Of a stretch of DNA of 64,000 nt, positions 4,464 through 30,869 are shown piece by piece. The DNA comes from Perna viridis (lineage: Eukaryota). Both the position numbers and the translations under genes were made by a program. The stretch lies in NCBI GenBank assembly GCA_037379345.1, contig CM074522.1, positions 26,350,001 through 26,414,000 of the forward strand, written 5' to 3'. Numbering within the stretch: the stretch's first letter is position 1; each line of letters opens with the position of its first letter. Below the pieces are notes generated by a model. That model did not search any database and was not told where the DNA came from. It saw only the letters and a list, made by a program, of their open reading frames with translations.

Positions 4464-4550
4464 TCACCATTGTAGAACGTGGTAGTGAAGAGAATCTGGA
4501 CTGGTGACATTTTGTAAGGTAGGTATTCCACCGCACTGTTGTCTTACAAT
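4464..4550 (-). CDS. Gene 1 terminal exon
   Basis: tgtttag|[28 protein letters not shown]; AATAAA follows at 4434-4439 on the minus strand. Confidence 0.85.
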   Translation of the reverse strand: MVRQQCGGIPTLQNVTSPDSLHYHVLQW

Positions 4551-7500
4551 CTAAACAGATTAAAACAGAAGTAAATAGTATTCTTTTCATCTTAATGAAT
4601 TTGAAATTAAAGAGGCATTTAAACACCTTCATTTGCTGCGTTTCCAGACATATACCATTACACAGATAAAATTGTTAGTTTGAAAATCTAAACCTTATGA
4701 CAACCATGTGGTAAACTTTTCCTTTATTAAATACAATAAAACAGTACTTCCGGCATATGAAGTACACACATGATCTGCTCTGCCATGCAGGTTACTTGTA
4801 CATTGAATTTCAAGGTAAATCTATTATAACCTATTTCAGCAGGGGTTTTAATCAATTGGACAAACGCCTAAATATCGCCGTTGAAATCTGATTGAACGGT
4901 ACCAGGTTTTATTCTCACAGAGCAGAAAATATATCATTAACTTGCTTCAAGTCTTACCAGTATGCCAACCAAACAACGCCTAACGGATTATATACATTCG
5001 CAGTGTGACGGTTGTCACTGGCAGTTACATTGTAAACGTGCTTACCTGCTGGAGCCACTTTTCACAAAATTGAATTTGATTTCGTTGCCTGCAGTGTTAG
5101 TTGATCTTTTCTTTTCAGTGTTTTGCCATATCTTTAGCTTATGATATCTTTTAATTATTATGTTATTTTTTACTGTATTTTTGCTGATACACTACTTAAT
5201 GACCGTATTTGTTATTCATCTGCAATTTTACGCGTTTTATTTTAGTTTTGAAACGTTATGTTCAGAATTATTCTATGCTGATTGAATGGATAAATATGCA
5301 TTCAACATTTTAACTGAACAACTTTATAACAGGAATATTTGACAATTTTTACTAATAATTGATCGGATCAAACAGCTACAGGTCTTTGAGAAACTATATG
5401 AACTTTTTTTTTTATGTTTTCTTTTTTTGTTTGTTTTTTTTTTGTTTTATTTTTTGCATGTGCCTTGTATATTCAATGTTTATTTTATCTACTTATCATA
5501 TGTTGAATTTGTTTCATATACTTTTTTTTTAAAATGTTTGGTTTCAATCCATTCTCAAATCGCCTTTAAAACAGAGAAATAGTGTAAGAAAACATGCATG
5601 CACTGTAGATGAATATTCACCTCAATTTGACCGTTGTTATAACAACTAATTAAAACTCCTACATGATCTGTTAAGTGACCATTTCTCAGCTTACCAACTG
5701 GAATATATGATGGCAAACTGTGGCAAAGATTGGATACCTATTCAAATAAATATGTATATTTTATATACGTTTGGTACAAAGCTAATGAACAACAGAAAAA
5801 AAGACGCATTTACAGTTTTATCAACTGATCAATTCATTGAAAATTATACCTACAGTATACATCGGAATAATTATTCGTAGCTACATACATGTATCTGCCA
5901 AATTATGATGCCAAATATGAGGGTGAACTCCCTCATTCCAAAACTGAAATGAGGGTAATAGTCCGCAAGGACATTTATTTGATGTATACAAAAACATTTT
6001 TGACGCAACGACAGTTTTTAGCAATAAATAATAACGTCTTAAACAAGGTATCTGTGTCATTATTTAATTATCACAGACCCAATATGGTTCATATATTTGT
6101 GAAACAAATTTTAAAAAATGACACCATTTAACTGTTAATGTTGAATCTAAATACGACTTATAAGGGTTTGCAAGAATCATATTAAGCTTTGAAAATGACA
6201 CAAAAGATAATACAAATAATGAAAAGATACAACAAAGGACTATGGAGGTATTCGAATGCATGATTTGACTAAAAATTCTTGTCAATGTTTCTTCGATCCC
6301 TGCATCACGTTTACTGAAAAATCGGGCAAAATAACATCCCAAAATAGGTCGTATGCTGTTCGCTAATGAATTAAAATATTCCTCATTTTTTAAAAATTAC
6401 TTTTAAAAATATCGATGCCATGTTCTGAATTGACGAAAAATTCTCTTATGATGCTGTTTAAAAAAAAATAATAAAACAAAACAAAAACAAACAAACAAAA
6501 AACAACGAATTCGGTGCATTTATCTTGCATTTTGTGACTCCCGTCAGGGAGGGGCTGCATCATTGTAGCTAGATAATTACCAGATTACAGTCACTTGCAG
6601 TATGACGTATGTCGCTAGCGGTTCAGGACATACCGACCTTTTTGGGACACCTGATACATATATTACTCCCGGTTTTACGTGCGAGTTCATATTACCATAG
6701 TAGAGTTTTGTGTAAAGTTTAGTTTTCCTTTTTATATTTAATTTATTCTATTCGTTTCTCAGCATTATGAATGTAAATCATCTTAGTCTCCAGATTTCTG
6801 GCCATGTATTAGGGTTTTCATGTATTTTAATAGTCGCATTGTTCTCTATTTGCTATTTTGTTAGTGTCTCCGACTATTGTATAAATTAACCATTTCCAAA
6901 TTTACCTCAATACCAGGACTCCAATTCGAGATCGATGGAGCTCCACAGAGATTCATGATTAATGCATCTGCTGAATTTGTGCCATCTAAACATCCGTTCG
7001 ATGACACAGCTTGAAGGCTTTGACCCTTGGCAATGCTTGTAATGGTGCTGAACTTATTGCACTGTCTAACTTTTGGTACTTAAGAATCAGATACATACAA
7101 ATAATTGACTTAAACACGTATGATAAAAGACAACACAGCAGCAAATAACATCTCCAATAAGCATATGTATCATTTTGTGTTTGTTTTATTGTATCAATAA
7201 TATTAATATGATTTCAGGCTTTACCTATGACGGACAGAATCTATATATTAGTCAAATACCAAATTAGTTGATAATGCACACCAGTAATACGTCCAAGATA
7301 TACGAAAGGTGAAAACAAATATAAATAAAATGGTGAATAAATCAGTTTTAATTGTGCATATTGAAACACTATAACGACCCATGATTTCCTAATGACGACT
7401 ATAATATTTTTATGTAATGACTTTAATCTGGTAGCACCATCAACCGGATCCAGAAGCCTACTTGTTAGCAGTCTTGTATGGTTCGAAAGTTCTACGTAGT

Positions 7501-10500
7501 TAGGCGAGCTTTGGCATAACGTATGGGATACGTGATAGAAAAACTTTATACACATGAATACATGTCGGAAATTAAACACGTTTTCTATTCGGAAGGTATT
7601 ACTCTCTCGTATAGTTTGTTTTTCTTGTGTTTTCCCTTTTCACCCATCTCTATGAAAAGGTCAAACTAAGGAGCTGATTTCAGTCAGTAGTGTTATTTAT
7701 CTCAGGAGGTAAATGCAATCTATAAAATCTCCGAATTTAATTTGGTACATTAGAGACCAAACATAGACTATAAGACAAAAACTGGAATTAAAGGATCTTT
7801 CGTATATAATAAGATATAAATTCCTCGCAAGACTGAATGAATATGTCAGCGAGTAGCGGAGCATACGTTGCATTACCGACCGTATGTTGAACATCACGTC
7901 CATTGAATGGACAATTATGGTGTCCTTTTAAAATTCTAGCATTTTTACAACATCTTTTTTTAATACATTTTGAAAATGATGAGGAATCGATTTTTTACAG
8001 TTTGAAAAATCCCAGCTAGACACTCAGTACTATGTTTAAGCATCGAATTTATTCATCTGTCATAGAGTAACAACGATATTTATGCATATTGCATTTAAGT
8101 CGAGATTTCAAATGAGAATGGGGAATATTAGTATAAAAAAAAACAGATCTTGGTGCTTTTATTTTCCGATAATACAAATATAGATTTACCTGTTGTTGGT
8201 GTCTGTGTCGAAGTTGTTGGTATTGTTTTTGTATTTTGGGTTGTTGGGGCTAAAACGACAGAACATAAAATGTTTGATAATTGAATACAATTATTTATTT
8301 TCCAAATCATGCTGGACCATTGAGTTACAATGTCATTGAAATGCACTGAAAACAAAAATTTCAAAAGCAGATATCTCTGTCAAAAACCTGATTTTTCTAA
8401 CATTCTATTGAAAAATTTCTGAGCAAATTCAATGATGCAGAGGTAAAAAAAATGGTCCTTTCAAATAGAGAAAGCATCCTTGAGTGATCAGTTGGGTTTT
8501 GACATTCATGTTTCCCATTTTCCCCATTTTGCCATGATTCTTAGAATACTTACAATGTAATCCATTTTAAAAGACTACGAATAAAAACAGTTTATATCAA
8601 GTGTTAAATGTAATTCACTGTATGGTATAGATACAAATAACAATCATCGTCTCATAATGAACTATTTATTGGTATAAAGAACTTACATATGTATATAACA
8701 CTATTGATACATACACAAATATGTTCAAATGAATACACCGGAGTTTTATTTAACCACATACATTTATTTAGTAGTTAAAGTCCGTTGGTTATGTAAATAA
8801 GCGATAATTTTCTGTTACCATAAATGCAGTTATATCATATTTATTTATGATATTTCAGAATTTGAATTTAGTAAACATAAAGACAACAAATAACCAAGTG
8901 TTATATTTGTGTCTGTTAAAGCAATAATGAAAACTAAACATTTTTACTTTTAGAAATAGATAATGAGATAATGACGCCTTTGAAGATATGATGTTCTACA
9001 TTCAATCAATCAGCAGGTATATATTTGTTTAATAACAGTTGCCGCTTTCTGCTTATTAAATCTATTGGTATTTTTCTTGTTTTGTTTTTGCTTTTGTCAC
9101 GTTTTTCACTGATAATTTAAACTTCACATTCGTGACTTATCGGAACGTCTATCTACTGGTATTCACACGTTCTTATAAAATATTACATTTTAATAGCTTA
9201 CGTGGGGACGGTGTAGTAGTCGTTATCTCTATAATAAAAAGAAGTTAATACATATATAGATATGTATGTTCGAAGCATGCAAGAGTCTAATGAAACGTGT
9301 ATCTGCAATCATTGTCTTGAAATACAAATACAATTTGTCGAATACAGATGTGCTTAGTAAACATAAACATTGTCAAAAGACCACGCCCATAATGATCAAA
9401 CAATACACGTGAAGACTGTTATTCACTATGCATTCGGTGTAACAATACCTAATCAATTTGGCAGGGCCATATAGGAATATATCCAAATAAAACAAATTTT
9501 ACCTGTTTTAAAAAAAAACGGTTCTATCCTTTTTTTTTATTTCAGAACAAAATATAAGTATAGTATATGTATATGAGGCTAAAGAACAAGGCAAACTGCG
9601 TATATACATCGAAAATATATGGAAAAGTGATTATGGGTAGTTTATAACAGTTAAATGTATGGCAAGAACAACAAACCTAAATATATCGACAAGAACAAAA
9701 CCACATATTATGGCTGGATGAGCTGGTTTTTAGATACAAGTATAATTTTCTTCCCGAGAAACTGCTACAGATAATATTATGATTTCTTTATAAACTCTTT
9801 AAAATTAATTTTATTACTATAGTAACCATTAAATGTTCATATCCTTGACGTTCTCGAACAGATCAGTTCAGACAAGTAAACAACGAAAACTGTATTTACA
9901 TGTACATGTAAAAACTGTAACACAGATTTTATCGAACATTTAATATACACTGTGAAAGAGTTATTTACGGATTCGGACGAAAATCAAATGAATATATTCC
10001 AGGGATACAGACTACACAAGGAAAATATACACACACAAACTTGGGAGCATGAACCATGTACACCGACAGGGTAAGCATCCTACGCTTTTCTAGAAATAAT
10101 ATTTCTTTTCAAGAAAAGCTCTTTATTTTTTTAGTTTTTGACACAAGTCATCTATCTAAATAAAAATAAAAGTTCAAAATAAAAGTTGTTTAACGTTGTT
10201 TCTCATGTTTGGATACTGGTGTAGTAGAATTTTGTCCAGACACTTATGAAAGCTGGCGACTTCCGATTATGGAAAACAAATGAAAAAAGAATAGTATGTG
10301 CATGTACGTACATACCTGTCTGACACTGTACTCCTGTGTACCCAGACTGACAAATGCATGCGTAGGAACTTCGACTACTGACACAAAACCCATTGACACA
10401 TGGTTTCGAAAAGCAATCTGAGATAACAAAAAAAAATATACCAATACACACTTTCATATGATGTTATCTTAGAAAAAAAATATATTACTATATTATATAT

Positions 10501-13500
10501 GAGTGATTTACAATACCTGAACAAAAAAGATAATTGGATTTTTGTTACTTTTAGTCAGAAATATTTTGTGTATGAATGTAAACGCAAACATTCATTTCAA
10601 AACGGTTCGATGGAGACAATTTCAACTTCACTGTATATATTATCAGATATGAAAGTTCTCTAACTAGTATAACTTGATATTTATATATGAAATAAATTAG
10701 GTAATTCAACCTTAATTCAATCAAAACGTTAAAGCACTTTCTTTCTAAATAGGATAACCAAAATAAAAAATATAAGTATTCATACCACGAACGCTTGTTG
10801 GGAAACTAGTGCAGTCGTTCCGGGTTTTCTATATCACTCGTGATATTATTTTTATGTGTGTTATTCACATGTTTTGTAAATTAACAAAGTATTTTTCTTG
10901 TTCATAAACAATTCGATCAACAGATACTTACGATCAATTGCTGCAAAATAATAACAAGATTTTAAATATAACGCCATGTTTTCATATTTTTAAGATTTTG
11001 TTTATACGAATGGAGCTACGTGTACAGCGACGTCTTATATACATGAAGGTGTCTGAAATATCATTGGTTCAAATAGCTCTATTTTTAATGACATACGTTA
11101 TTTGCAATTGATTGTTTGGACATGTTACGCAATGTAAGTGGGTGCTCTTTGGAGTTCTGCATTTTTCCGTTAGTCGGAACTTTGGTGGTGTATCCTTAAC
11201 AATGTCAAATACAAAAAGCTCCGCCCCTCTTAGATCAGGCCTAAAATCATATAAAAAAACTTAATTCAAATTTAATATAAAGAAAGGAATATTCATATTT
11301 GTTATTTAAATCTAAAATAAAATATGCTTGCCTGTTTCGCAAAACATTCCTGTATACCCAATCATGCATGCGCATTCGGAGAGTCCGTTTACAGTATAGC
11401 ATTTTCCGCCATTTTTACAACTGATTCTCGCACAGGCTACCGATGTTAAATATTTTTAGTATATGCATATCATATAACATATTTGAAAACATATATATTT
11501 TTATTTAGTTTCGCAAATGTGAATTATTTGTAGATATTCGTTTTCGAATTGTAGCAGTATTGTTGTAGATCAATGCGTTTTTATGAAGCATCATGTTCCT
11601 TTTACGGGGTGAATGGGATCTTGTAATTGTATTGGCATTATTCAATTTTGTAAAATAATAAGCTAATATATTGATCTTTTTATAAAAAAGAATAAAGAAA
11701 AAAAAAGCAACGGTACAAAGTAAAATAAGCACACAAACCAGAGCAAAGAATATCAAAATGACAAAAGATATAGGAACATCAATTCAAACATGACCAAACT
11801 GAAAGTTAACGAAAAAATGAGCAGACTGTGTCTAAAATTGAAGGAAACACATGCATTATATTCAAGTTTAACATTTATTCAACCATTTATTTTTTTTATT
11901 TTGTTTCTGAGACCGCAGTGTTTTTTTAAATTCAGTTTCAGTTTGAAAAGGTAACTTATCTATGCGTTTCGTTTAATTTTGTTGTATGTTTGGTTAACAC
12001 ATATTTAACTGTCATTCATGTAAATATACTTACGATTTATTGCTGCAAAAAAGGAACAACAACAATGTTCTTAATATTCACATACGAAATATATATTTGT
12101 CAGAATATTCTATTTAACGATAGTATTGTGAATGTATTTGCTGCAGCACTTTAAATACTGTGCTGACTATGACAAACGATTTCACAAAAACCTATGTTAA
12201 GATTAGTACAATATTTGAATATTTTGCAATACATTTGCGTCAAATATGACATGAATCAGGAAAAAGTCTTCACATGTATAAGCAGCTAATTCTCGATACT
12301 TTTAAATGATAGAAACAAACAATATATGCATATAAAAATATATTTATTTATATTTTATTTTGTTGCATTTTTTTTCTATACGGCCAATTCAAATAATTAT
12401 CGCTATTTACTGAGGTTTCTTTTTTAAATACTTTTTAAATGCTGTCTAGAATTGATATTTTACTATCAATTACAGTTACAGCTCCAGTAAAAATGTCATA
12501 CTTTTTGCATCTTTCATTTTGCTGAATGATATATTCAGCAACGATTTAATTTCGCGGTTTTCAAAGCTCGCAAAATAAGCGAATAGAAGCTACACTATTT
12601 CTAAAGCTACAGTATACTTACGTTGGTCACAATATTGTCCTGTATACTGATGGTCACAAGAACACACGTAGGAAGTAGGTTCATTTATGCACTGTCCGTG
12701 TATACATTTAGAATGTGCACAATCTAGAAAAACAGGTTATACATTGATATATAAATAACATCAAGACTTTAAAAGTCATTAAGAAAAATCAACCGTTCGA
12801 GAGAAAATCAACAAATGAGAGAGTGATATTTTGTCCATTTGCTGATGTTACATGTATATTAGGGAAAGGGCTTAATGACCAATGACACTGCTATTGAAAA
12901 CCCTACACATTTATATTGAAATGTGACTTTGTCAGTCTACAAAAACACGTTTCTTAGTCGTAAATTATGTTGAAACGCGCAAATATATGGTGTAACTACA
13001 AAGTTATACAAGTACTTACATTTTCACAAGTATATTTTTCCATTAGTGTTAAACAGTTGTGAGATGGATTTTTTTTTCTACTCGTAGAACAAAGGATTGT
13101 TTTTTTAGAAACAAGATGCATAATATTGTAGAAGGTATCGTAAGGACTCAAACATGCCAATGCATTGGAAAGGTACCGTGCTGCACCGTCAATTTATCAT
13201 CAATTCACCTCTATATATACGACGGATTGTTTTAGAATCGTGCAAGAATGTTTAGTATAAATATTACTTACGATTTGTGACTGAAAATTAAAAAAAAAGA
13301 AAGAAATAAATATACATATATATATAGAGAGATTCGGCTTGAATATATATATGCTTTGTTATGAAAAATATATAATTGAAAGTAATCGTACAATACCTCT
13401 TTTCAATGCTTTGTAAAATATCCACAATGTTTGAATAATATGCTATAATTGAAAGAAAAAAAATGGATCTAATTAAAAAAGGGACCAACAGTGCCATTCT

Positions 13501-16500
13501 ATTTTATATACCGAAATGATGTATGGCTGCTAAATGTAAACATGTAATAGATGGAATGACAAAGACATTGCTCGTTCAACAGATGCATAGTTATTACGAA
13601 CCAAATGGAAAATAACACAAACGGAAAATCGGTTTTATATGGATGTTTTAAAAAAGTAGGTTATGTTCTTTTATGTATAAAAGCAATGGTGTATAGATAA
13701 AAAAACTCATATTATTAAAAACCAAACTGCATTAAAGTATATTTTATGTCAATGAACCTGTGACTCTTAAGTTTTTATAGTAATCATGCTAACCACATTT
13801 TGAGAGAAAATCAATACATAGTTTCCAAGTATAAAGAAAGGACAGGGAAAATAGAAACGTAAAAAAACCAAAAAACACGTGTACAAAATCAAAGTATATG
13901 AGCTTCCCGGATTCCATTAAAGATTAATGGAGTATAGTTTAGGTGCGCCGATAGTTTAAGGATACTCCTCTTTTCTAAAAACACACCCACGGAGTTGTTC
14001 ATACAATGCCACGTCTAGTGAAGAGAACAATAAATGGAAAACCATGCCACCATAAACAAAATCTTTTCATATTGTGCAGGGGGATACGTATACATCATGA
14101 CAATGCACGAGTTAATGATGACGATCATAAAACTTCTGCGGTGATAACGTTTATCTTATAGCTGCATAACCTTGTCTCAGAAGTCTTATTGTAAGAAGTC
14201 TAGCACGGTACAAAATGTTTTTTGATCGGCTTGAAAAATGGATGATTACTTTGATGTTCATATCAAAAAAACGATTCGGTCTTGACGTATTTTTTATTTT
14301 TATTTTTATCTTGTACCTTCCAATGAACAAGGGTTGTTCTTAAATTCATTTGAACCTACACTGTGCAAAGAAATGGACGGTGACATCTCAGGTTCTTTTC
14401 CCTTTTGAAATCATTAAAACTGGCTGGCTTCTTTCAGAAACATTAAATTAAATTTGTCTTACGTGTGTCACATTTTTGACCTTCAAATCCAGGTGAACAT
14501 ACGCACGAGTATCCATTATTATGGCTCACACATTGTCCATGAATGCAAGGGTTGTTTAGACAATCTAAGTATTATTAAGAACTGGCAATACTACACTGTT
14601 TTCATTATCTTTCTTTAATATTTAAAATATTAGAACGTGAATAAGACAGAAATATTAAAATCATTTAGATACAAGACACAAAAATACAAAAAAATACCAA
14701 AAAACAAACATTTATTTTTAGGATATATTTGGATGTATACATACGTGTGTGGTGGTGGGGTATGCGTTTTTCAAAGGAAACCATAAACACTTCAGACAAT
14801 GATCTATATTTTCCAGTAGGACCTCATCATTTGGAGTACAGTAAATTATTTTCATTTTTTTTTATTTCCTTTTAAGTATACTTAAACTACATATATGTGA
14901 ACCGTCAGTTTTCATAGGATGGATTTGATTTAGCAAGTAGTTTTTCCATACAACTTCATATATACATGAATCTGACAAAGGATTCATTTAGATATCACTT
15001 ATCCTATCGTACTTTTTTGTAATATGGTTATATCACATTGTTTTATGAAATAATTATGTGTTGACCCCAATAGAGTAGATCTGAACGACTGTGTGTGAGT
15101 GCGTGTATTGATTTTCTTTCTGACACATAATTAGAATCTTAACCACATATATTCATCCTTTGTTTGCTATATTAAACGTTAAAATGATTTCATTTTCGAA
15201 TATAATAACAAAAGTGTGAGATGCATATATAATATTAAATCTTATACCTCTCCAGTAAAATATAGAAATACTCACGATCTATAACTGCAATATAAATGTA
15301 AATAATTTTCAGGTTCCAGAAAAAAAATCATATCTTGACAACTTGATTTTAACCTCGTATTTTTAACTCATTCAAGAATTGAAGGCTAGAAGTGTATTGA
15401 TAAACTGTAGCAGATGAACTAGATGCCACAATTTTGTTCATTATTGTTACGGGATCATTTGAATCTTCAGTCGTTATCAATTTTATTTAGAGTCTTTCCA
15501 AGTTTCAGACAGGAGGTGATTCGTGCATGTGAAAAACACACAAAATTCACTTTTATTTCTAATTTAAATACAGTTTTATGTCACATAAGCAGTCTTATGA
15601 TGTCAATATGTTGTTAAAACTTAAGATCAATCATTTTATAATGTGTACATTAATTGGTACTTTGAAAGCGTTATCATTCTTGATTTATTGCTTTACGTGG
15701 TGTTGAATGCATGGTTTTCTACAAAGTATAGACATGTATACGGAAATGACTATAAATGTATGAATTATGTGTATTGAATATCATTGGTTTAAAGGGTTTT
15801 TCTTCACAAAGAAGCTCATCTGTCATCGGCGGTGTTTAGATCGTAAATGGACTAGTACTAATTAAAGTATTGAAAAAAATAAAGATCGACATAAAATTTA
15901 ATAATACCTCGATTACATATTGTGCCACCGTACCCTTTGTTGCATGTGCAGCTAAATCCGTTCAAAGTATTCTGACACGTTCCGAATACGCATGGATTTG
16001 ATAAACAATCTACATATACAAAAAACAACCATAATCTTTATTTCTTTATCTAATTAACTGTTGAAGTACAACATGTTACATATACAGAAACTATTTTTTT
16101 GTGAAAATATTCGATGTTTACCGACGCATACACAATTCCAGGAAATATGATTTTCATAAATAAATTAAGATTTAATGCAATAAGCAAACCAACCTGATCA
16201 TAAGTAACAAAATGAATTATAACAATTATATTATAAATTGAATACGACATTACTGAATAGAAGATAAATAGTATATAAGAAATGAATATATATATATATA
16301 TATATAACATCTCAGAATGTGACGACTCTATTCTCTACTCTGCTCCATCGGATCAAATTGATACAGGGAAGATAACGTAAACTTAATTCCCAACGATGTT
16401 AGAACTGTCAACTTTGTGAAGCAGAACTCGAACTCGAGCTTTCGCTGGCCGTGTCATTCCTCCTCGTAGGATTAATCTAGGGCTGTAACTTAGTACATGA

Positions 16501-19500
16501 TGTATGGTAGTACGGAACAGTTCATCTAGGTGATTATGTAGGATATAGTATCAAATTAATATATATTATATATATTTTATAAATTTACGTTATCTTTTTG
16601 TATCATTTTGATCCGATGGAGCAATGAGCGAAATGCAGTTGCCATACTGTGCAGTGTTCAGCAGAGCACGATGTCTGGATTTTAGCTAACCGTCAACATT
16701 CTGGGCGAACTAGGGTCATATCAGTTGTTTAAAATTGCTACATCAGAGTTCTGTACGTTAGAGACCGGATCGTGAATCAACAGAAACAACTCTGATACAC
16801 AGAGTCAAACACTATAAACACCGCTCGTTCCAGAGATGAAGTTTTGACATTACACATGCTGGCTGCAATGAACCTCCGTCGGGAAGTTCTTCAGCACGAC
16901 AACACTCCTTTGCACACAACTCTTGCAACTGCTAACACTATTATAAACCAGAACGTAATAGTGCTCCACCAAATGTGAACCCACTTGAACATTTGTGGGA
17001 CGGTTTTAATCGACGTGTTCCCAGACGGCAACCAAAACCATCTGGGATAATAGTATTCGTCGTTTGATCCAGTCTAAGGCGAAATAGGTCAATTCTGTTT
17101 TTCAGGTGCACAATAGATATTGAGTTTTGATGTTAGAATTGCTTAATTTTAACCTTTTAATCAATTCTTATACATGAAGAACCAGTGAGCCAAATTTCAG
17201 TGCAATGTTGTGCTCATGATTATATTTTATGTGTTGCGTTTCTTATTGTGATGAATATATTGGAATCAAACTACAGCCCTAAAAGCAGGGATTTATATGT
17301 GCATATAACACGTAACATATTACAAATCAATAAACAATACTCAATCAACGAAATGTAAACTGGTTTTTACTTACGCTCGGTTACTGTAAAAATAAAAGAC
17401 TCATAACATAAAAACTGAATGCTTTGCATCATTCAACAGTATTTTTATCTGTCGATTTTTCTCTATTTTATACAACATTTCTTTGTAATTGATATGAAAA
17501 CTGTACCTGTTTTGAGTGAGAAGGTAAAAAGCCATTACGCATAGTATACACGTGGCCTCTTGATAGTATGGAAACAGGTAATTTCAACAGTAGATTTAAT
17601 GCAATATTTTAAATTAAATGAATTAATTTTGAAAGGAATCCACTTACGAGAAAATTTATGCCGACAAAAACTAGAATGTTCCTTATGTAAAAACAAAAGA
17701 TAAGTATTTCTAATTCAACGCTTAATATGTCTAACGCAAATGCAGATTGTAATATCCGCATATCAAATGCATGGTGTTTACCAGTTTCACAACGTGTTCC
17801 ATTGTATCCTGTGTAACACTGACATGTAAACCCATATCGGTTGTCCAAACATTTTCCGTTACCATGACACGGATCAGGATAGCAATCTTTAAATTAAACA
17901 GACCATTATAAATCAGGGTAAGGTTTGATAAAAGAGATATATACACATTGTAACAAACCGAATAAAAATGCTTACACTTACCCTTACTTGAAAAGGGAAA
18001 CAAGACGTCACACGGACAAAAAACACTAGTTATATGAACTACCATAAAAAAACGGGAGCTGCGGAAGAGTTACCATCCAAGTGATTATAATCATGAAATA
18101 ATCTACCAACAATAATGAAACTCCCCGACATGTGTTTGTTTGAACAGAAATATATAGTCTTGTTTGTTTGTTTGTTTGTTTGTTTGTTTGTTTGTTTGTT
18201 TTCTTTTTCGCAAGCGATATGAATAATTAGGAAAACATTCAGTTCATTCTAAACACTTGCGGTAAAACAAAATAAAACAAAAAAAAAAACATTTAAAAAA
18301 AACAATATTAAAAAAAAATTATCAATTATTTATTGGTAACATATTTCTTTGGAATGACTGAATGATTTACTAAAACAATATAAGCTATCACTACAAAATA
18401 CAAAATTTTAACTATACTTACTATAGGCTACTATCAAGAAAATAGAAAAAAGAGTATGATATTAAGGATAGCGGAAACTGTTGTAGTGATTTATTTAGTT
18501 AAAACTCTGGAAAGAGTGTCTTATATATGTAGATGCTCTAGAGCATGAATAGTTGAAAATCGTTCCGTCGGTAATGACCTATTTCGGAAATGACGTATAC
18601 TGTTAGGAAGTAATTGTTTGAATTTTAAAAAAGACGCACAGCGCGTGTTTTAAATAGTTTGGAAGATTTGGTCGACAAATGTCGATTATAGCGGTGCATT
18701 ATCAACAACATAAAATATTATTTGAGTATGAGTCGATCTCTTCCTAACATGCAACCATGAAGTTTAATTTGCTAGGAGCTGATCTTCAAAAGAAATGAAA
18801 AAGAATAGATTTGTTAGTGAAATGCAAGAAAAGGAGCCGTGTATAACCTAAATATAAGACATAAATACTCTCAGTGATCAGCAATATGTCTTCACCAAGT
18901 CTACACAAAATTAAGTTAGCAGTTAGCTATGAAAGGCCCAAACAACAAAGGTACGATAACAGAACGATCATATTTTTCATAACAAACTAAAAAGAAAAAA
19001 TGACACTAAGACACATCAATGACTATCATCGCCTTACTGTGGACAGGTACTTGTCTGCAATGGGGGGTCATAATAAAAAAAAACAATTGTTAACTTGAAA
19101 TTTAAAGAGAACTCGAAACATCGGTTTCTGATTATTTCAAAATGCATGCATTATTTTTAGTAACAAGAATGAAATTGTGTTTTTGTAATTATATAGCTAC
19201 AAGAAATGTCCGAAAAAAATCCGTGTATCGTTTAAAATTTGATTTGATCCATATTTAAAGTAGTTCAATAGCAAATTTGTGTGTTTGCGTTGTATCCATA
19301 CAAACGTATTTAAATGCTTACAATTATTGGTTATCATATATTTAAAGGTTATTGTTAAATATTATTGTTAGTGTATTAAGCCCCTTTCTCCCCTATACTC
19401 GAGAAATATTTTCATTTTATAGGAAGAAACTGAAAATCACTGTAACTGACCCATAATGCCAGTCACCCATCACCCTTTTCTGAAACCTAAATCAGCCAAA

Positions 19501-22500
19501 ACAATTCCGCGGGTATAATGATATTGCTCAGAGCAATATCTGTCAATATGATTGCAAAATACAGTAATATCAGTACTTAAAATATGTTTATCAAATTCAT
19601 TTCAAGGATCAAATTTATCACCTTACTTTGATCACACTTTGTTCCTTGGTAACCATTATTACATAAACAGGAATAACCATGTAATTCATTCAGACATCTT
19701 CCATGCACACATGGGTTAGCAGGATTGCAATCTTCAAAGGTACAAAAAATATATTCATTTTATTTTGGTTACATGCATACATAATTCTAGAATCTATGAG
19801 GCAAGAAGTGCTATAGAATTCATAGAAAATTTCAATATTGTTCAAACGTCATGTATTGTTTAAGCGTGGTAATTTTAACAATTTCTCATCACAATCGACC
19901 ACATTTTGTTTCTTTGCTAGATAAGTGTAGGTTCTTAAGAAGTATAAATAGAATTACTTGCCATCATATATTTATTGTTTGTTTGTTTTTTTGTTGGGGT
20001 TTAATGTCCGAGCAGCAATATTTCAGCTATATTCAGACGATGAACATAAAATTGATAAATGAACATGAAATGATGATGAAATGAAAGAGGGATGGTACAC
20101 AAGGACAATGGGGTCGACAAATTTTGATTGCCACTGGAAACAGGGAGAGCACCACAGTAGGATTCTTTAACGTGCGAGGAACGTGGCATCTTTCCCAACA
20201 CGGGGCACCACTATGGTTTGCGGTCAGGTTTTCCGTATTATAGCCTGACAACCCTAGTATGTAACACGCCAGGGGTACCCCATTCCACCACCTGGGGCAC
20301 ACATCGCAGTTGCTCTGTGGGCAGAGCGCCCTAGCCCCGGCTATGGTTCTGAGCACTATTTAGTCGCCTTTTACGACAAGCTTAGCGCTGCTGCAGGCCT
20401 ATTCTTTTAACACCCGGACCTGCGCGGGGCCATCATATATTTAGAGGTTATTGTTAAATATTTTAATTTGATGAGAATCCTGCCATTTGATTGGTTTGTT
20501 GACAAATATCAACATTGTTTCCATTGTATAAACTAAATTGCTATTTAGGCAACGCCCATCTTTTACGGAACTACTTTTTGTTTGTCAACATCCGAAACAA
20601 CGTTTTTAGTCACATTGTAACGTTGAAACGTGTTCACGTTTTGACAGTAAATTATTAACAAACTTTATGTCCGCCGGGTTATGTCAAATTCCTGCTTTAA
20701 TAACTGTGTCTTCAATTTTGGAAAATAACTGAACATTTTCCAGTGATGAAATGACAGCGTCTTGCCGCTGATTTTAAAATGGCGACCACTTTGTTTACTA
20801 GAATCACTACATGGCGGGAAAATTAAAGTTGCTGTTTACTCAGTGTTAATAAAAGTGATGGATATTTAATTTTTTTTATTTAAGTAATATCGTTAGTGTG
20901 TTAAGCCCTTTTCTCCCCTATACTCAAGAAATGTGTTTGATTTTATAGGAAGAAACTGAAAATCACAGTAACTGACCCATAATGCCATTCGGAATTATTT
21001 TTTATGCAATATTTTTTGGGGAAATTGGGTCCTGTTTTGTTTTGTTTTTTGTTTTTTTTTTTTTGTTCGGCGTTTTTGTGGGGGACCTATTCACAAAAAT
21101 ACTCTATAGCAGGCACAAAAATGATGTTTTTTTTTTTGCATTTTTGTTCTTACTAGATTTTTACTGAAACAAATAGGACACTTTAAGGATACAAAATTTT
21201 GTTCACGGCGCGCGTACATTATAATCAAAACATTATATGAATATATTAATTCGGTTCTTTAAAAAAAATTCCAATATAAAACTTACCTAGGATTTAGACA
21301 AATATATTGTGTATATACCATCTTATATATTGTATAGAAACTATTGTTACTAAATATTGTTAAAAGACCTTACACAATAGCATAGAAATTATAAACGTAA
21401 AAATCAAGCTTACACTTGTGTTAATCCAATTCCTCTCTTTCAAAATGTAATATGACGCAAAATATACTTACGATTAACGTCTACAAAAAAGTATCGTTGT
21501 CAGCATTTGTTTAAAAAAGAAACAGTAATTATACAGGAATAAATGCAACAAATGTTTTCATATGTCTCAAAACATTTGGAAGCATATGACTAGTATTTTT
21601 TTCTTTGCACATTTAAACTCACGAACTGCACATTTTGCTCAAATGCAAATGAAAGGAAATATAAGAAAATAGATATGGTGAGTATGTCAAACAGACAACC
21701 CCAACGGGATGAAATATGTCAACTCAAGGCCACCCATGGGTCTTCAAATGCCTTTAGTGATTTAAATCATCTGAGAAACATTTGTCTTCTTATTAACATT
21801 TTGATAAAAAAAATATCATAGATTTATTTCTTAATTGAAAATATGTTTTTTATATGTTTTCGCGGTGGTCCTAAACATGTGATAAAGATATGTTGCAATT
21901 TTTCCGTTGTACGTGTACATCATCTGTTCAGACGATAAACGATTTCAAATCATTTTTTAAGGTTAATCGGAAATTAAGGCTATTATTCGTGTAATGAATT
22001 ACGGAAATTGCCTAAATATATTTATTTTAGATTAACTTGATTATGATAAAACGTCTAAAGCACTTGTTCCATAAAATGTTTAAGGTAAGACACATTTTTT
22101 TATTTATTATCAAGCATATAGTTTCATCTTAAGATATAACCAGTTAGTATTTTTATATGTATAGTACAGCCATTTGTATATTTAAAGCAGTCAATTTTGT
22201 TATTTAAGCGATCACTGTATGATATACTGCTGATGGAACAAAACATATACTTACATTTATCACATCTAATTCCACTGTATAGTCCTTCACATATACACAC
22301 AAATTCAGTATTCGTGTTCAAACAACTTCCATGAACGCACGGATTTGGGTGACAATGGTCATACACACGTGAAATTCCTACAAGTTATAATGTTTTATAG
22401 TGTAAGCTTTGCTAAATGTTTTTTCAATGTAGCAGTGTTTTCATGAAGATTTGCCGGCAATTGTTTTTGTGTTAAACATCTAAACGTCTTGTTTATAATA

Positions 22501-25500
22501 GAAATGCCTGAATTATTTAAATCTGCAAGTTATATCAATTGATTTTTTATCGGTCTTTATTTGCGCAATCCCTCTGGTTTCAATATTAGTTTCTAACTTG
22601 ATATGCTAACTTTCATAAAATATTTAACAAGTGCATATGACCAACTGTGCAACTCAATAAAGAGATAGGAAGATATTGACTTAAAGTAAAACTGTTAAAC
22701 GTTGATCGATGACTAAACGTTTTTTTCTGGCACATACATTTACAATTACAATGTTGACATTTTGTATGTTCATGGCTAATTCACATCAACTAAAAAGAAC
22801 AAAACGAAAAACACACACACACACACAAAACATAACCTAAAACAAAAGAAAAAGCATTTCGCCTGATCGTACAATACCACAAAAATGATCTTATTAAGAT
22901 ACTAACGCGTGTTCGTACTTAACCATTCAGTAAATTCATCAGCAAAACAAAAGCCAACCCTGAAACATCTCCTAATCTCCTAAAGCTTTTCCAATATAAA
23001 TAATCACAAAAAGAACATGTCAACAAAAACAAATTGTCCATAACATAGTAAAATGTATACATATAAAGACAAAGAATGTTTTATGGCATTAGTTTGTTTA
23101 TATGACGTCATAATTGCACCACAACGATACATCAGTTAACAAATATTGCTGGAATTTTTTTCAGTTTTTCGGACATATACACCCAAAAAATAACTTTATT
23201 TGTTTACCTAAGGCGAACCATATTATAATCAATATATACATTGAATATGACGATGTTCCATTAGTTTAGACACCATTTCCTTACACAAAATATGACCAAA
23301 AGGTGACCAAAAAGTATAAAATTGACATGATACGTGCATCTGTATTTTGGTCAACTTGAAGCAATTCTGTTTAGTCCTTAAAGCAAGAATTATCAAAACT
23401 CCTTAAGTTTTCCCATATGTAAAGGGCTCAAGTCGCGAAATTCACAATTAATTTTTCAACATTTCATGACTAAATTTAATAGAATTTTAGGCCAATAGAA
23501 GGCTATAATACTAATTAAGTACATACTAAAACAGCATTATTTACTAACACAGCATTTAATAGATTTATTGAAAAAACTTGCTATGATCAAAATTGAGTAT
23601 ATGATTAAGATTCCTATCGAAATGAAAATAGGGTGCTATAAATCTATTAAAAGGTTAATGGGAGAATTTTATTTGAATGGAAATTAAGGCCATTATAACA
23701 TTCAAGGTTTCAGTACATAAACATTATAGGAGAAGACCATGTTATTGTGCAGGTCATAAATATCGAAACTTATCTGTTAAATATTCATGAAAATTAAATT
23801 GGAACAACATAATTTCCTTTTCGTAATTAATTAATCGAGATTTATAATTAGGAAATTTAAATTCCCGCGCCTATGGGCGCCACCATGATCGGTTGAACTG
23901 TGACGTCACGAAGTCGGTTTGTAAAGTGGAAGTAAATAGGTAATTGGTTACGATGTCCGAAGAAATCGTAAATTTGGGATTTTTCCCCTATAATATCAAC
24001 CCAAAATTAATAGAAAAAGAAATTGAGGCACATCATGTCAGACATCATTGACGAACAACGGGATTTGTAGCCAGATGACTAGTATTTGTAAGAAAAATCT
24101 TAGGCTACTTCCGAAGAATGTTCGTGTTGCTGGTAAAAAAAAAACTTTTAGAACATTTCTCTTTTATCATTCGTGTAATCGTAAACTTGACAAGTCATCG
24201 TGTTATGGTGATTAGATAAACTTGATCGTAGAAATATTTACGGAATATTCTTTGTTTACATATTATTTGCAGTACTTGCATCAGTATCAAACCGACTTAG
24301 TGACGTCACGAGCCAATCGGAAACTATGGGTAAAAATCAATAAAATCTGACTATGATCTTCCTTCAGATAGGAGAGTTCTGCAAGATGGCTATCCACTTA
24401 TATTTCAAGGATTCCGAACTTTGCATAGTCTTGAGCATTTTATAAAAGTGCATTTTGTATTTAAGGTTATTTATTTTTGTTTACGTGGGTATGATTTATC
24501 ATAAGAGCCTAATTTAATGCAAAGGTGGTCTTTCCCTTTAAAATATACAAACTGGTTATAAGATGTTTAAATGAGACAAATTTGTATCTTGATAAAAATG
24601 AAAATTTAAATGTATTTTCAAATACATGAATTTATATTTGTTTGATCAAGACCATCTTCATTTTGGTCATACAATAGCCGTCATTGCTACGTATGATATA
24701 AAATCTTTGACAACAAACACATCAATGTAAAATATGTAACAAAAAAACTTACTTTTCTCACAATTTGTACCTTGGTAACCATGGTTGCATGTACATGAAT
24801 ATCCTTGCAATTCATTTTTACATGTTCCATACATACATGGGTTAGAAAAGCAATCTACAAAAATGGGTTAATCATTTGCCTGATTTGTTTTATGAAGTAA
24901 TACAATAAAACTGGTACACGATAAACTCATGACTTTATATTATATTGCTGCAGTTCTAGAATTTATGAGGTGAGATATGATAGTATAAAATAAAACGATA
25001 TAAATTTGATTTTGTAAATCTTAACAATCTTATCAATTGCATCATATCGAAGTTTAATCAATTAATCGGTTGAACCTGTTTGTTTACACACCAAATGTAC
25101 GGACGTTGCCATCAGGGCATAAATTAAGGTAAGTTTTCCATAATTTTAATATATTTTGCTCTTGTTTTTGTTTCAAAATTAAGTTTGTGTATTACTTTGC
25201 CTTGAACATATAACATACATTAACAATACAAATACATGAGCTAAATGATTTCAATCACACAACAATGAAAGATCGTTGTCATATTTTATTTCTTGACAAG
25301 TGAACCGTAAAATTAATTTTGGTAATTGTGTTGAAAAAATTGGTACCTCAAGACTCGTGCATTTTATTATATTCTTCATCTCATGAACAAATTTAGTGTC
25401 TATATGATAAATCAGTAAACACATTTACAATATAATTGAATCATAGTGACACTAACTGCAAGCAAATTTGATTAATCCACTTAAAATTGCAAAAATAAGA

Positions 25501-28500
25501 ATATACTTACGGTCAGTATCTACAAAATAGTTCAATTATCAGTATTTATCCGAAAGAAAAATTAAGGAGATATATAAAGTGAAACTATAGAAAAAATAAC
25601 TACCAATCTGCGGATACCGTAAGTGTTTATGGGTATATTCGTTTTTACCAGTTTGTGTCACTGTTGTGTAGTTACAATTTTAGCCTACCCACTAAAAGGA
25701 ATTATTTGCGAATATTTGTTTGACAGAAAACATAACTCGATCAAAAATGGTTTACCAGCTGTCACAGCATTTTTGTGCCAAAACAAAGTACATGTTCTAT
25801 TTAATTTTCAAAATATTATTACGATATTTGAAGGTTTCCTAGTAGATTTGCAATCGGGATATATTGGCTACATACTGCAACTTATTATTGAGTCAAAATT
25901 CACAATTAAATAATAGGCTGAAATGGCTGGAAAAAAAACACTCTCAAAAAAAGGAGAATGTCAGATATCAAATACTTTTCCACAGTTGAAGGAGGTAGGC
26001 CTAAGGTAAGGGACACAACTCCTAAAAATCATAGGAACGTTTGCATTCAGCATTTTACATCAATATTATCTAAGCATCTAATTAACTTAGATTGATTTTA
26101 TTCTGTTTCAAACAAAAGCTTGAGAGGCTTTGGTGAAATTGAATATGATAAAAAACATATCACTGATTTCAAGAGTTATATCCTTACCATAGGTCTACCT
26201 CCTTAAAAAAGAAAATTACAAGTTTTAGATCCATTTTGCAAGAAGGTCTCCATGACAGCATTGATGAAAAGCAAAACGTTTACTTCGAAGTAAGCACACA
26301 TTTAACCTAAGTATTATACAATTTCATACAAATTTGACTAATTAACATTTTTTAGGGTCGAATTTGATATAAATTGAACTAAATTCTTATATCAATAAAT
26401 GAATTTCAATGTAATAGTAACGACAATGATGCTTAGTAGTATACCTTACTAAGGAAACAGTAAATGTAATCAATTCTTGCACCATTTTGCAAGACGATTT
26501 AATTTTTGGTGTACTTATGTCGATTGAATTTCTTGAATATATCAAAACAATACTTACACTTATTGCATCTATGGCCACTGTAATGCCCTTTACATAAACA
26601 CAGAAATCCCGTATTTGCGTTTCTACAACTTCCATGAACGCATGGGTTTGATTGACAATAATCATACATCGGTTGTGATATTTCTATAACAAAAAAAAAC
26701 TTACATGTAAAGGGTTGCTTAAATATTTGTAACAAAACTCTATTATTATTAAAACATTACATTTGTTTAATATTATATATATATCTAATTATAGTTTGCT
26801 GTATCAAAACATGTACCTTATCTTGTATTATGGACAAGGGTATTTTTTCAAACCTTTAGGAAAATACACAATCCAAAACATCCTTTACTTTAAAGATGCA
26901 ACCAAGTAACTTTTGAAACAAGTAGGAAACTATTATCATCCGTAAATGAACCCAAACTTTAAGCAACTAAACTGTTAATCCTCGATAAATCTAAATGAAA
27001 ATTGTTTCCTAATGGGTAGCCATAGCGGGCCGATGAAGGTGCAGTTCCGGAATTGATCACATGCCACTTCGTCACTGTCCGGAAGCTTTCTGACAACCAT
27101 TAAGAGTAATTTCCGGAAAATTGGAATTATTTACAAATATGTTCCTAGTGAATAGCCGCAGAAGGCCGATAAAAGTACTTTTGGTATTTATTCTTTATTG
27201 TTCGGAGCTTTATCACACCCTTTCCGGTCAATACCGGGAAAGTTTGTATTGCTTACAAATATTGACACGTTTGAGAAAGCTTTATATGTTTAAAAGATGT
27301 TGACCTTATTTTGGAGTATATGACAGAGTTCTACTTATTGTTTATCGCAGCATATGCTTTATCGGCCTTCGTTAATGTTATCATCCCTCTAGTTTGACTG
27401 CTTTCGGACTGGACTTAATAACATGACATCTGACTGATAAAGCATATGATCTGAAACATGGTATATAATAATCTACATATATCCTATAATATTAAGTATC
27501 ATTTTACTAAAACACTGCACTGCTTATAAGGAACTTTAAAAAGATGTTGTGTTGAAATCGTTATGTCAGTCTTAACCATCTTTCACTTACGACAACAATC
27601 ATTTGTACCGCAATGACCATTGGTGCTTAAAACCCAGATTATCCCTTCAGTCTAAAAAAAACAAATAATTCACAACGTTTATCACACAATCGAAGCAAAG
27701 AAAAAAACACGCAAGCAATTGATGTTTGTATGAAGGGGTGGTAATAATTTGCAATGATACTGTTCCAGCTCAGTTTTTAGACACAATACCAATCTGATGC
27801 GTGTGGATAAGTGTAAAAAGATTTTCTATATTCCCAGAAACTACAGGTACATGGCTTGTTACAGATACCTGTCTCTGAAAGTATTACGATGTTTCTGGAT
27901 TTTTTACGCTTACATTTTGATACAAGTGGAGCTGTTTAAAAAGTACCTTCTCTCAAACATTATTCAATTCTGTAGAGTTAATGTGCGCTGTAAAACAACT
28001 CTGTTGTTACGTACCACTCCACATCAGAATCATGCTAAATGTGATTCATGGTTGGATAGCTTACATATTTTTTGTGATAATGTTTTTTAAAATATCATGG
28101 TAAACAGAAAGTAACATTTGGCTTTTCATATAACCTTTCTTCATAGGAGATACAAATATAGAATGTATAGTTGAATTCAAAATCAAGGAAGACAATCTGT
28201 AAATGCCACTTTAATAAAATAAAAATGTTTGATTTTCCATTTGGATAATCTCCTAAGAACAGTCAGATTGAAATGAACAATTACACATTTCATCATATAG
28301 ACCTATAAACAACTTAATTACAAAAACAAAAATATGTAACCTTTTAAGGGGTATCACATTTCACAGAAGTTGCACGAATCCTACAAAGACTGCCACTTAA
28401 GTCTCAAAACCTAATTTTACTTCGATTATTGTTCTGTGTCATACATGTGTTTTCTCTCAATACAATAATTTCATTTTGATCATCTACATACCAGCACTAT

Positions 28501-30729: not shown

Positions 30730-30869
30730 NNNNNNNNNNNNNNNNNNNNNNNNNNNNNNNNNNNNNNNNNNNNNNNNNNNNNNNNNNNNNNNNNNNNNNN
30801 NNNNNNNNNNNNNNNNNNNNNNNNNNNNNNNNNNNNNNNNNNNNNNNNNNNNNNNNNNNNNNNNNNNNN
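30730..30869. other. Assembly gap
   Basis: N run. Confidence 1.

What the first reader, a model, noticed from the sequence alone, without database searches (positions are those of the whole stretch)
10932..25519. Eight 9-nt microexons encode the inter-EGF linkers
Seen: every short (102-105 nt) EGF exon is preceded by exactly one 9-nt AG/GT-bounded exon with a strong donor (7x GTAAGT, 1x GTGAGT). They are 25511 YTD, 21472 YVN, 18422 IAY, 17375 VTE, 15276 VID, 13272 LTN, 12034 PIN and 10932 AID. All are phase 1-1 and fit the x-I/T-D/N linker consensus. I found none before the two long EGF exons, which already contain their linker; that is a good internal control. Inference: either constitutive serial microexons, or a combinatorial mechanism (up to 2^8 in-frame isoforms) that tunes EGF-EGF spacing and rigidity. 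Gene predictors would miss them.
Basis: seen in the sequence. Interest (0 to 1): 0.8.

Follow-up and report, generated by a model that had tools for sequence, protein, structure and literature searches.

The report
Serial 9-base exons between EGF exons
A mussel gene for a secreted protein with ten EGF domains has eight coding exons only 9 bases long, each the cut-off start of an ordinary EGF exon; the same design recurs in at least four sister genes, so the exons are almost certainly real, but I obtained no RNA evidence for how they are spliced.

Summary
All eight 9-nt AG/GT-bounded segments are at the stated places on the minus strand. Each lies in the intron before a 102-105-nt EGF exon, and all are phase 1-1. 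AG-N9-GTRAGT occurs 8 times on that strand of the 64-kb window, all in this array (about 0.2 expected).

They look like real exons. Four paralogous genes in the same genome carry 22 more such units. The flanking introns are no more alike than shuffled sequence, yet the splice signals and an Asp/Asn codon are kept (position 7 is A in 30 of 30). A model trained only on the paralogs ranks the eight as the top 8 of 355 candidates in the window.

Origin: ordinary EGF genes of this genome start their exons 11 nt before the Cys1 codon (44 of 45). The microexon is the first 9 of those 11 nt, cut off by an extra phase-1 intron, and the two-exon unit was then duplicated. Inclusion gives the usual six-residue Cys6-Cys1 linker.

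Not shown: inclusion in mRNA. Constitutive splicing is my preferred reading. The 2^8-isoform idea is untested, and UGC motifs are not enriched. This is a new variant of a known kind.

The parts
25511..25519 (-). microexon m1 (ATACTGACC; junction Y, then T-D, last base C starts a His codon)
   Evidence: paralog-trained score 19.7
21472..21480 (-). microexon m2 (ACGTTAATC; Y-V-N, then His)
   Evidence: score 21.4; the positional counterpart in the C12:20.27 Mb paralog is TTGTTAATC
18422..18430 (-). microexon m3 (TAGCCTATA; I-A-Y, then Asn), before the CYPDPC-type EGF exon
   Evidence: score 17.0; the paralog counterpart TTAAATACT also encodes Tyr at the third residue
17375..17383 (-). microexon m4 (TAACCGAGC; V-T-E, then His)
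   Evidence: score 25.6
15276..15284 (-). microexon m5 (TTATAGATC; V-I-D, then His), GTGAGT donor
   Evidence: score 29.0
13272..13280 (-). microexon m6 (TCACAAATC; L-T-N, then His)
   Evidence: score 32.5
12034..12042 (-). microexon m7 (CAATAAATC; P-I-N, then Pro)
   Evidence: score 34.1; the paralog counterpart AGATCAACC encodes the same I-N through two synonymous changes
10932..10940 (-). microexon m8 (CAATTGATC; A-I-D, then His)
   Evidence: score 32.2
26558..26683 (-). long EGF exon L1 (126 nt) with its linker in one piece (ISQPMYDYC...)
   Evidence: Pfam EGF 18.5 bits, below the 21.5 cut-off, six-Cys pattern present
24753..24854 (-). EGF exon 2 (102 nt), starts AT TGC
   Evidence: PF00008 28.8 bits against a cut-off of 21.5
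22255..22377 (-). long EGF exon L3 (123 nt) with its linker in one piece (ISRVYDHC...)
19627..19731 (-). EGF exon 4 (105 nt)
17782..17886 (-). EGF exon 5 (105 nt)
   Evidence: PF00008 34.1 bits
15908..16009 (-). EGF exon 6 (102 nt)
14463..14564 (-). EGF exon 7 (102 nt)
12622..12723 (-). EGF exon 8 (102 nt)
11332..11436 (-). EGF exon 9 (105 nt), starts CC TGT; its apparent donor is GC (gcaagc)
   Evidence: Pfam EGF 16.5 bits, below cut-off
10316..10417 (-). EGF exon 10 (102 nt)
28505..28828 (-). upstream His/Tyr-rich exon of the same gene, beginning with a hydrophobic, signal-peptide-like stretch (judged by eye); phase 0 at its 3' end
   Evidence: 39% identical over 123 codons to the C12:20.27 Mb paralog; no Pfam family
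27591..27651 (-). 61-nt exon (phase 0 to 1) linking the His-rich exon to EGF exon L1
   Evidence: best splice-model candidate in both the window and the paralog, with similar peptides

Best explanation
The eight 9-nt segments are real coding microexons of a minus-strand gene. The gene encodes a probably secreted protein with a His-rich N-terminal region followed by ten EGF-like domains.

Each microexon is the detached first 9 nt of what is a single EGF exon in ordinary EGF genes of this genome. There the exon reads AG|AT ATT GAT GAA TGT, which is D-I-D-E-C. Here an extra phase-1 intron sits inside the codon before Cys1. That intron was most likely gained once in an ancestral EGF unit. The two-exon unit (microexon plus 102-105-nt exon) then spread by tandem duplication within the gene and by gene duplication to at least five genes.

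The microexon supplies the middle of the six-residue Cys6-Cys1 linker: x, then I/T/V, then D/N, plus the first base of the His codon. Inclusion therefore gives the canonical linker length.

Recognition of so small an exon is inferred to rest on unusually strong intronic signals: a long pyrimidine tract and a GTRAGTA donor that pairs with U1 over seven to eight bases. This offsets a poor exonic side, since the last exon base is C or T and not G.

What is shown: the anatomy, the conservation and the homology to canonical exons. What is inferred: inclusion in mRNA, constitutive use, a single intron gain, and the splice-site compensation.
For: - Chance is excluded. There are 8 strict matches in the array against about 0.2 expected, and none elsewhere on that strand.
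- The frame fits. All exons are phase 1-1, and the microexon's last base plus the next exon's AT gives His, matching the unbroken Y-D-H-C of long exon L3.
- Paralogs keep the units. There are 30 units in five genes: the window gene, plus C12:20.27 Mb, C12:26.33 Mb, C12:36.53 Mb and C6:14.43 Mb.
- The 125-140 nt of intron on either side are no more alike than shuffled sequence: mean local score 11.8 against 11.4, and no pair above the null maximum.
- Coding constraint that was not used to pick the units: position 7 is A in 30/30, position 6 is A/G in 27/30, position 8 is T/C in 28/30, position 9 is C/T in 28/30.
- Positional counterparts differ by synonymous changes, for example ATA AAT against ATC AAC, both I-N.
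- A model of acceptor, 9-mer and donor trained on the 22 paralog units only ranks the eight window sites top 8 of 355 AG-N9-GT candidates. Their scores are 17.0-34.1; the next best is 4.2.
- Canonical EGF exons of this genome start 11 nt before the Cys1 codon in 44 of 45 cases.
- Family EGF exons cluster apart from canonical ones: 5 label changes against 30.4 in shuffles. A one-clade tree is not rejected, p-AU 0.79.
- Paralogs also have 6- and 12-nt versions that end in the same D/N codon plus C/T, so length changes only in whole codons.
Against: - No RNA evidence.
- No transcript-derived or annotated protein of this gene or its paralogs was found in the protein collections.
- Skipping any microexon keeps the frame, so the reading frame does not require inclusion.
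- The 30 units were picked using a GTRAGT donor and a pyrimidine-rich acceptor. The donor-strength comparison with EGF exons is therefore partly circular.
- The tree rests on 32 columns and is poorly resolved.
- No other species could be examined.
Confidence: 0.75

Rival explanations
1. The microexons are real but used alternatively, singly or in combination. Transcripts would then differ in linker length (3 or 6 residues between Cys6 and Cys1) at up to eight places, tuning the spacing and stiffness of the EGF array.
For: - All eight are symmetric (phase 1-1), so any subset can be skipped in frame.
- Paralogs tolerate 6-, 9- and 12-nt versions, so linker length can vary in evolution.
- There are precedents. 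Schistosome micro-exon genes use symmetric tiny exons for protein variation (PMC4350168). The plant invertase 9-bp mini-exon is skipped under cold stress (PMC3340406).
Against: - No RNA data were obtained.
- UGC motifs upstream are not enriched: 10/30 against 11/42 at EGF exon acceptors.
- Donors and pyrimidine tracts are stronger than those of the neighbouring EGF exons (with the selection caveat). PMC8831610's introduction reports this pattern for constitutive microexons.
- Inclusion gives exactly the six-residue linker of canonical EGF arrays.
- The Asp/Asn codon is kept in nearly all units.
Confidence: 0.2
2. The 9-mers are not exons. They would be chance or decaying splice-site-like intron sequences, or intronic decoy or recursive-splicing sites that never reach the mRNA.
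For: No transcript was seen here. The EGF exons alone already give an open frame. AG followed closely by GTAAGT resembles recursive splice sites.
Against: - Eight sites seen against about 0.2 expected.
- The sites are kept in five genes whose introns are otherwise unalignable.
- Codon-like conservation inside the 9-mer, including synonymous differences between positional counterparts.
- Length variants differ only by whole codons.
- The 9-mers are homologous to the coding start of canonical EGF exons.
- The flanking introns are only 0.4-1.7 kb, so recursive removal has no obvious purpose.
Confidence: 0.05

Closest known systems
One-exon-per-domain EGF arrays with phase-1 introns, as in the canonical EGF-repeat genes of this same genome at C1:71.68 Mb, C2:50.2 Mb and C15:2.56 Mb
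   Same: The domain boundary intron has the same phase 1 and the same position, 11 nt before the Cys1 codon. The Cys6-Cys1 spacing is the same six residues. The I/V-D/N core of the linker is the same.
   Different: Here a second phase-1 intron lies 9 nt further in, so the linker core stands alone as a 9-nt exon. The residue before Cys1 is mostly His instead of Glu or Asp, and the first Asp of D-I-D-E is lost.
The 9-bp mini-exon of plant invertase and fructosyltransferase genes, which encodes DPN of the WMNDPNG motif (PMC3340406)
   Same: A 9-nt exon encoding three residues of a conserved motif. It is kept across a gene family and normally included, with skipping reported under some conditions.
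   Different: There is one per gene, in an enzyme active-site motif, and in plants. Here there are eight per gene at a repeated domain boundary, multiplied by duplication.
Schistosome micro-exon genes, MEGs (PMC4350168)
   Same: Several very small symmetric exons in series in genes for secreted proteins. Skipping any of them keeps the frame.
   Different: In MEGs most of the coding region consists of micro-exons, and alternative splicing is documented. Here micro-exons alternate with ordinary domain exons, make up 72 of 1,146 nt of the array, and their splicing was not observed.
Neural, Srrm3/4-dependent alternative microexons of bilaterians (own knowledge; background in 10.1101/2024.09.17.613571, which I did not read in full)
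   Same: The size class (3-27 nt), in-frame insertion of a few surface residues, and strong 5' splice sites.
   Different: There is no enrichment of UGC near the 3' splice site. The gene looks like a secreted structural or extracellular protein. Tissue pattern and regulator are unknown.
Conserved small coding microexons that annotation misses, as in plants (PMC8831610)
   Same: Exons of 15 nt or less with conserved size, phase and flanking exon structure across a family. They can be found by modelling the microexon together with its flanking coding sequence.
   Different: Those are mostly single, ancient microexons in housekeeping domains. Here one microexon type has been multiplied at least 30 times inside one gene family.

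Membership tests
EGF-like domain (Pfam PF00008) | Six-cysteine pattern and a Pfam score above the curated cut-off | tested here: met
   All ten exons match the six-Cys pattern. EGF exons 2 and 5 score 28.8 and 34.1 bits against a cut-off of 21.5. L1 (18.5) and exon 9 (16.5) are below the cut-off when scanned alone. The other six exons were not scanned.
Calcium-binding EGF (EGF_CA, PF07645; D/N-x-D/N-E/Q ... D/N ... Y/F) | The N-terminal D/N-x-D/N-E/Q motif before Cys1, and a Pfam score above cut-off | tested here: not met
   With the microexon read in, the motif is x-[I/T/V/A]-[D/N/E/Y]-[H/N/P]. The first D/N is absent in 8/8 and E/Q is replaced in 8/8. EGF_CA scores 13.3-14.6 against a cut-off of 27 on single exons. 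The joined sequence was not scanned. The internal C-x-N-x(4)-Y/F-x-C part is present in several repeats.
Microexon (exon of about 27-30 nt or less that is part of the mRNA) | Small size with canonical AG and GT boundaries | tested here: met
   9 nt; AG acceptor with a pyrimidine tract and a GTRAGT donor at all eight
Microexon (exon of about 27-30 nt or less that is part of the mRNA) | Observed inclusion in spliced transcripts | not testable with these tools
No transcript-derived protein was found.
Srrm3/4 (eMIC)-type regulated microexons | [quoted passage not shown] | tested here: not met
   TGC within 40 nt upstream in 10 of 30 microexon units, against 11 of 42 EGF exon acceptors
Schistosome-type micro-exon genes (MEGs) | Most of the coding region is made of very small symmetric exons | tested here: not met
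   The microexons are symmetric but total 72 nt, against 1,074 nt of EGF exons in the array
Recursive splice sites / RS exons | An acceptor juxtaposed to a donor, serving stepwise removal of very long introns, with no coding constraint | tested here: not met
   The flanking introns are 391-1,740 nt. The 9-mers show codon-level conservation.

The most novel reading that the evidence does not exclude
The serial microexons are independently regulated cassettes. By including or skipping each one, the animal would make a graded set of proteins whose EGF-EGF linkers are 3 or 6 residues long at eight positions. That would be a splicing-coded way to tune the stiffness or spacing of an extracellular EGF rod, shared by a whole mussel gene family.
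Probability: 0.15. Interest if true: 0.75.

Novelty: new variant of a known kind. Interest (0 to 1): 0.45.

Why it matters
If transcripts confirm it, this gene family offers at least 30 natural, independently diverged 9-nt (and some 6- and 12-nt) exons of one common origin, all in the same sequence context. That is a useful natural series for asking how a spliceosome defines an exon too short to hold both splice-site complexes at once.

It is also a clean, datable case of a microexon being born by an intron arising 9 nt inside a domain exon, and then multiplied by duplication.

In practice, gene models that skip these exons would give proteins with 3-residue instead of 6-residue inter-EGF linkers, and would lack the conserved Asp/Asn. 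Annotations of this family in mussels should be checked for that.

Tried and rejected
**RNA evidence**
- The look-up of sequencing runs listed three RNA-seq raw-read runs of the same species label (X21-X23) and 15 runs only guessed to be RNA.
No junction was seen.
- Local scripts did read the whole window for pattern counts and for a local tblastn against paralog loci.
- The shares of words held by X1-X15 (0.12-0.34) exceed the exonic fraction of the stretch (about 5-8%). They therefore cannot be read as evidence of spliced mRNA.

**Protein collections**
- The representatives search with the His-rich exon found only a 96-aa genomic ORF, P0003.
- P0003 comes from a 1.5-kb Logan contig that is 99% identical to the paralog at C12:20.27 Mb, so it is the same species and unspliced. 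It is alone in its cluster.
- A word search with the stop-free segment around EGF exon 5 found nothing.
- So I found no annotated or transcript-derived protein, and could make no cross-species comparison.

**Spliced model**
Exons were searched one at a time by reference, and junction codons were read one by one in a script.

**Other checks**
- The Srrm-type UGC idea was tested and not supported.
- Pfam finds nothing in the His-rich exon or in five candidate C-terminal exons.
- Earlier scan notes hold no finding on microexons.
- Literature searches found no paper in the held library on microexons in EGF arrays or in mussels.
- The two runs of N (30730-30869, 38854-39001) were left as they are. 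No contig that I take for human was met.
Full report

Yes. On the minus strand each of the eight stated positions reads the same way: a pyrimidine-rich tract, then AG, then 9 nt, then GTAAGT (seven times) or GTGAGT (once). A search of the whole 64-kb window for AG-N9-GTRAGT gives exactly eight hits on the minus strand, all of them the claimed sites, and one on the plus strand. The background rate outside the array is 0.009 per kb. First-order Markov simulations of the 16.4-kb array give a mean of 0.27 hits and never more than 3.

A six-cysteine pattern scan finds ten EGF-like coding segments on the same strand between 10.2 and 26.8 kb. With their splice sites placed, the exon lengths in order are 126, 9, 102, 123, 9, 105, 9, 105, 9, 102, 9, 102, 9, 102, 9, 105, 9, 102 nt. 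All are multiples of three.

Only phase 1-1 gives the EGF frame. In that frame the microexons read Y-T-D, Y-V-N, I-A-Y, V-T-E, V-I-D, L-T-N, P-I-N and A-I-D. The two long exons carry an unbroken linker (ISQPMYDYC and ISRVYDHC) and have no candidate microexon directly before them. EGF exons 2 and 5 pass the Pfam EGF cut-off.

**2.

The last base of each microexon and the first two bases of the next exon form the codon before Cys1. This is C|AT, His, in six cases. The spliced reading ...GAC C|AT TGC (D-H-C) therefore matches the unbroken GAC CAT TGT (D-H-C) of long exon L3. The 9-mers fit the coding sequence on both sides, not just the frame.

**3. The same units in sister genes.**

Searching the window's own genome (723 Mb, 46 contigs; the window is C12:26,350,001-26,414,000) with one EGF exon gave 72 matches. 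Most belong to ordinary EGF-repeat genes. Four other genes have the short exon form:
- C12:20.27-20.305 Mb
- C12:26.33-26.343 Mb, the next-door neighbour on the same strand
- C12:36.525-36.54 Mb
- C6:14.415-14.44 Mb

In these, 22 more 9-nt AG/GTRAGT units lie in the introns before short EGF exons. That makes 30 units in five genes.

The intron sequence around the units (125 nt upstream of the acceptor region, about 140 nt downstream of the donor) is no more alike between units than shuffled sequence. The mean local score is 11.8 against 11.4, and no pair exceeds the null maximum. The units are therefore old. They are not being homogenised by gene conversion, and they have been kept while everything around them decayed.

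Inside the 9-mer, features that I did not use for picking the units are nearly invariant: position 7 is A in 30/30, position 6 is A/G in 27/30, position 8 is T/C in 28/30, and position 9 is C/T in 28/30. Together these spell an Asp/Asn codon followed by the first base of a His/Tyr codon.

The window gene and the C12:20.27 Mb gene are colinear, and their positional counterparts agree:
- ACGTTAATC and TTGTTAATC both encode V-N.
- ATA AAT and ATC AAC both encode I-N, through two synonymous changes.
- The only two units with Tyr at the third residue are the counterparts that precede the CYPDPC-type EGF exon.

Where no 9-nt unit was found in a paralog, the best splice-model candidates are 6-nt or 12-nt exons that end in the same D/N codon plus C/T. 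Length thus varies only by whole codons.

**4. A non-circular test.**

I trained position weight matrices for the acceptor, the 9-mer and the donor on the 22 paralog units only. I then scored all 355 AG-N9-GT candidates on both strands of the window. The eight claimed sites take ranks 1-8 with scores of 17.0-34.1; rank 9 scores 4.2.

**5. Where the microexons come from.**

In the ordinary EGF-repeat genes of this genome (C1:71.68 Mb, C2:50.2 Mb, C15:2.56 Mb and others), 44 of 45 EGF exons begin exactly 11 nt before the Cys1 codon. They read AG|AT ATT GAT GAA TGT, which is phase 1 and D-I-D-E-C. In the family studied here the first 9 of those 11 nt stand alone, and the next exon begins with the remaining 2 nt.

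The 5' boundary of the microexon is therefore the usual inter-domain phase-1 intron. Its 3' boundary is an additional phase-1 intron inside the codon before Cys1.

A tree of 90 EGF exons is weakly resolved (32 columns), but it clusters the family apart from the canonical exons: 5 label changes against 30.4 in shuffles, with 0 of 500 shuffles as low. A tree holding the family as one clade is not rejected (p-AU 0.79).

The simplest history is one intron gain in an ancestral EGF unit, followed by tandem duplication of the two-exon unit and then gene duplication. This history is an inference.

**6. What inclusion does to the protein.**

With the microexon, six residues lie between Cys6 of one domain and Cys1 of the next (for example N-K-Y-T-D-H). 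That is the same spacing as in canonical arrays of this genome, such as C-E-K-Y-I-D-E-C in a long uninterrupted EGF reading frame. Without it the spacing would be three residues.

The linker is not a canonical calcium-binding motif. The first D/N is absent, and E/Q is replaced by His, Asn or Pro. EGF_CA scores are far below cut-off on single exons.

**7. How a 9-nt exon might be recognised (inferred).**

Twenty-nine of the 30 donors read GTRAGTA. The exon side is poor, since the last base is C or T as the coding sequence dictates. Pyrimidine tracts are longer than at the EGF exon acceptors (14.4 against 12.6 pyrimidines in 20), and donors match GTAAGTAT better (7.4 against 6.0 of 8). This comparison is partly circular, because the units were picked using GTRAGT and a pyrimidine-rich acceptor.

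Strong splice sites are the reported signature of constitutive microexons, according to the introduction of PMC8831610.

**8. What could not be shown.**

There is no RNA evidence.
- The look-up of sequencing runs offered three RNA-seq raw-read runs of the species.
- Local scripts did read the whole window.
- The protein collections hold no transcript-derived or annotated protein of this gene. The only relative found is a 96-aa genomic ORF of the paralog at C12:20.27 Mb from the same species.
- No other species could be examined.

**9. The gene around the array.**

Upstream lie a His/Tyr-rich exon (28505-28828) that starts with a hydrophobic, signal-like stretch, and a 61-nt exon (27591-27651). 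Both are conserved in the C12:20.27 Mb paralog. Downstream of EGF exon 10 there are Thr/Pro-rich and further non-EGF coding segments with no Pfam match. Another note of this scan (s1-783074) reads that part as an amidase-like domain; I did not test this.

Earlier notes of the scan take the genome for a mussel. I did not verify the species.

**10. Comparison with what is known, and verdict.**

Small constitutive microexons inside conserved motifs are known: the plant invertase 9-bp DPN mini-exon (PMC3340406) and the conserved small plant microexons that annotation often misses (PMC8831610). Serial symmetric micro-exons are known from schistosome MEGs (PMC4350168). I found no paper in the held library on microexons in EGF arrays or in mussels.

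The new element is the periodic two-exon module, a 9-nt linker exon plus an EGF exon. It is repeated eight times in one gene and at least 30 times in a family, and its origin is clear.

My estimates are:
- about 0.9-0.95 that these are real exons;
- about 0.75 for the whole account, including mainly constitutive use;
- about 0.15-0.2 for regulated or combinatorial use.

Interest is moderate: a neat, well-supported architecture and a good natural model for microexon definition, but not a new principle, and still without transcript proof.

Noticed in passing
G000 C12:36.525-36.54 Mb, C6:14.415-14.44 Mb and C12:20.29-20.30 Mb (loci L032-L050): Where paralogs lack a 9-nt unit, the best candidates are 6-nt exons (TTGACC, TTGATT twice, CCAACT, TCAATC, AAAATT) or 12-nt exons (AACCAGTCAATT, CTCCAGTTGATT). 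They have equally strong splice signals and all end in a D/N codon plus C/T.
   Followed up: partly
G000 C12:20.295-20.305 Mb (loci L042, L033): Between the last EGF exons of this paralog lie candidate mini-exons of 15-33 nt that encode Thr-rich peptides (TTTTSTTTTP, TTTTMSTTP, TTTKS). They have strong GTAAGT donors, so a mucin-like linker seems to be built from tiny exons.
   Followed up: no
window 11330-11331 (minus strand): The apparent donor of EGF exon 9 is GC (gcaagc), a GC-AG intron. No GT donor keeps phase 1 at that place.
   Followed up: no
window 28505-28828 (minus strand): The upstream exon of the gene is rich in His and Tyr (runs such as HYHHH, HQHHSH, HHYH) after a hydrophobic, signal-like start. 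His is also the usual residue before Cys1 of each EGF. There is no Pfam family. Metal binding is a guess only.
   Followed up: no
window 4460-8380 (minus strand): Downstream of the EGF array lie a Thr/Pro-rich coding segment (about 8131-8379) and several non-EGF stop-free segments with no Pfam match. Scan note s1-783074 reads 4464-7078 as a dead Tae2/Dae2-like amidase domain. I did not test this.
   Followed up: no
window 49090-49284 and 51809-52003: A direct duplication about 2.7 kb apart. The two stop-free segments differ by one residue, and the 800-nt neighbourhoods are about 79% identical. There are related copies in other loci, so this is probably a repeat element and not a gene.
   Followed up: partly
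window 20004-20360 and 62996-63407: Two copies of a dispersed repeat that also occurs at C12:20.2957 Mb and C12:26.346 Mb, with 70-90% amino-acid identity in several frames. One copy lies in the intron between m2 and EGF exon 4.
   Followed up: no
G000 C12:26.331-26.343 Mb (loci L039, L046): The next gene downstream on the same strand, about 7-19 kb beyond the window's left end, is a tandem paralog. It has eight short EGF exons, each with a 9-nt unit.
   Followed up: partly
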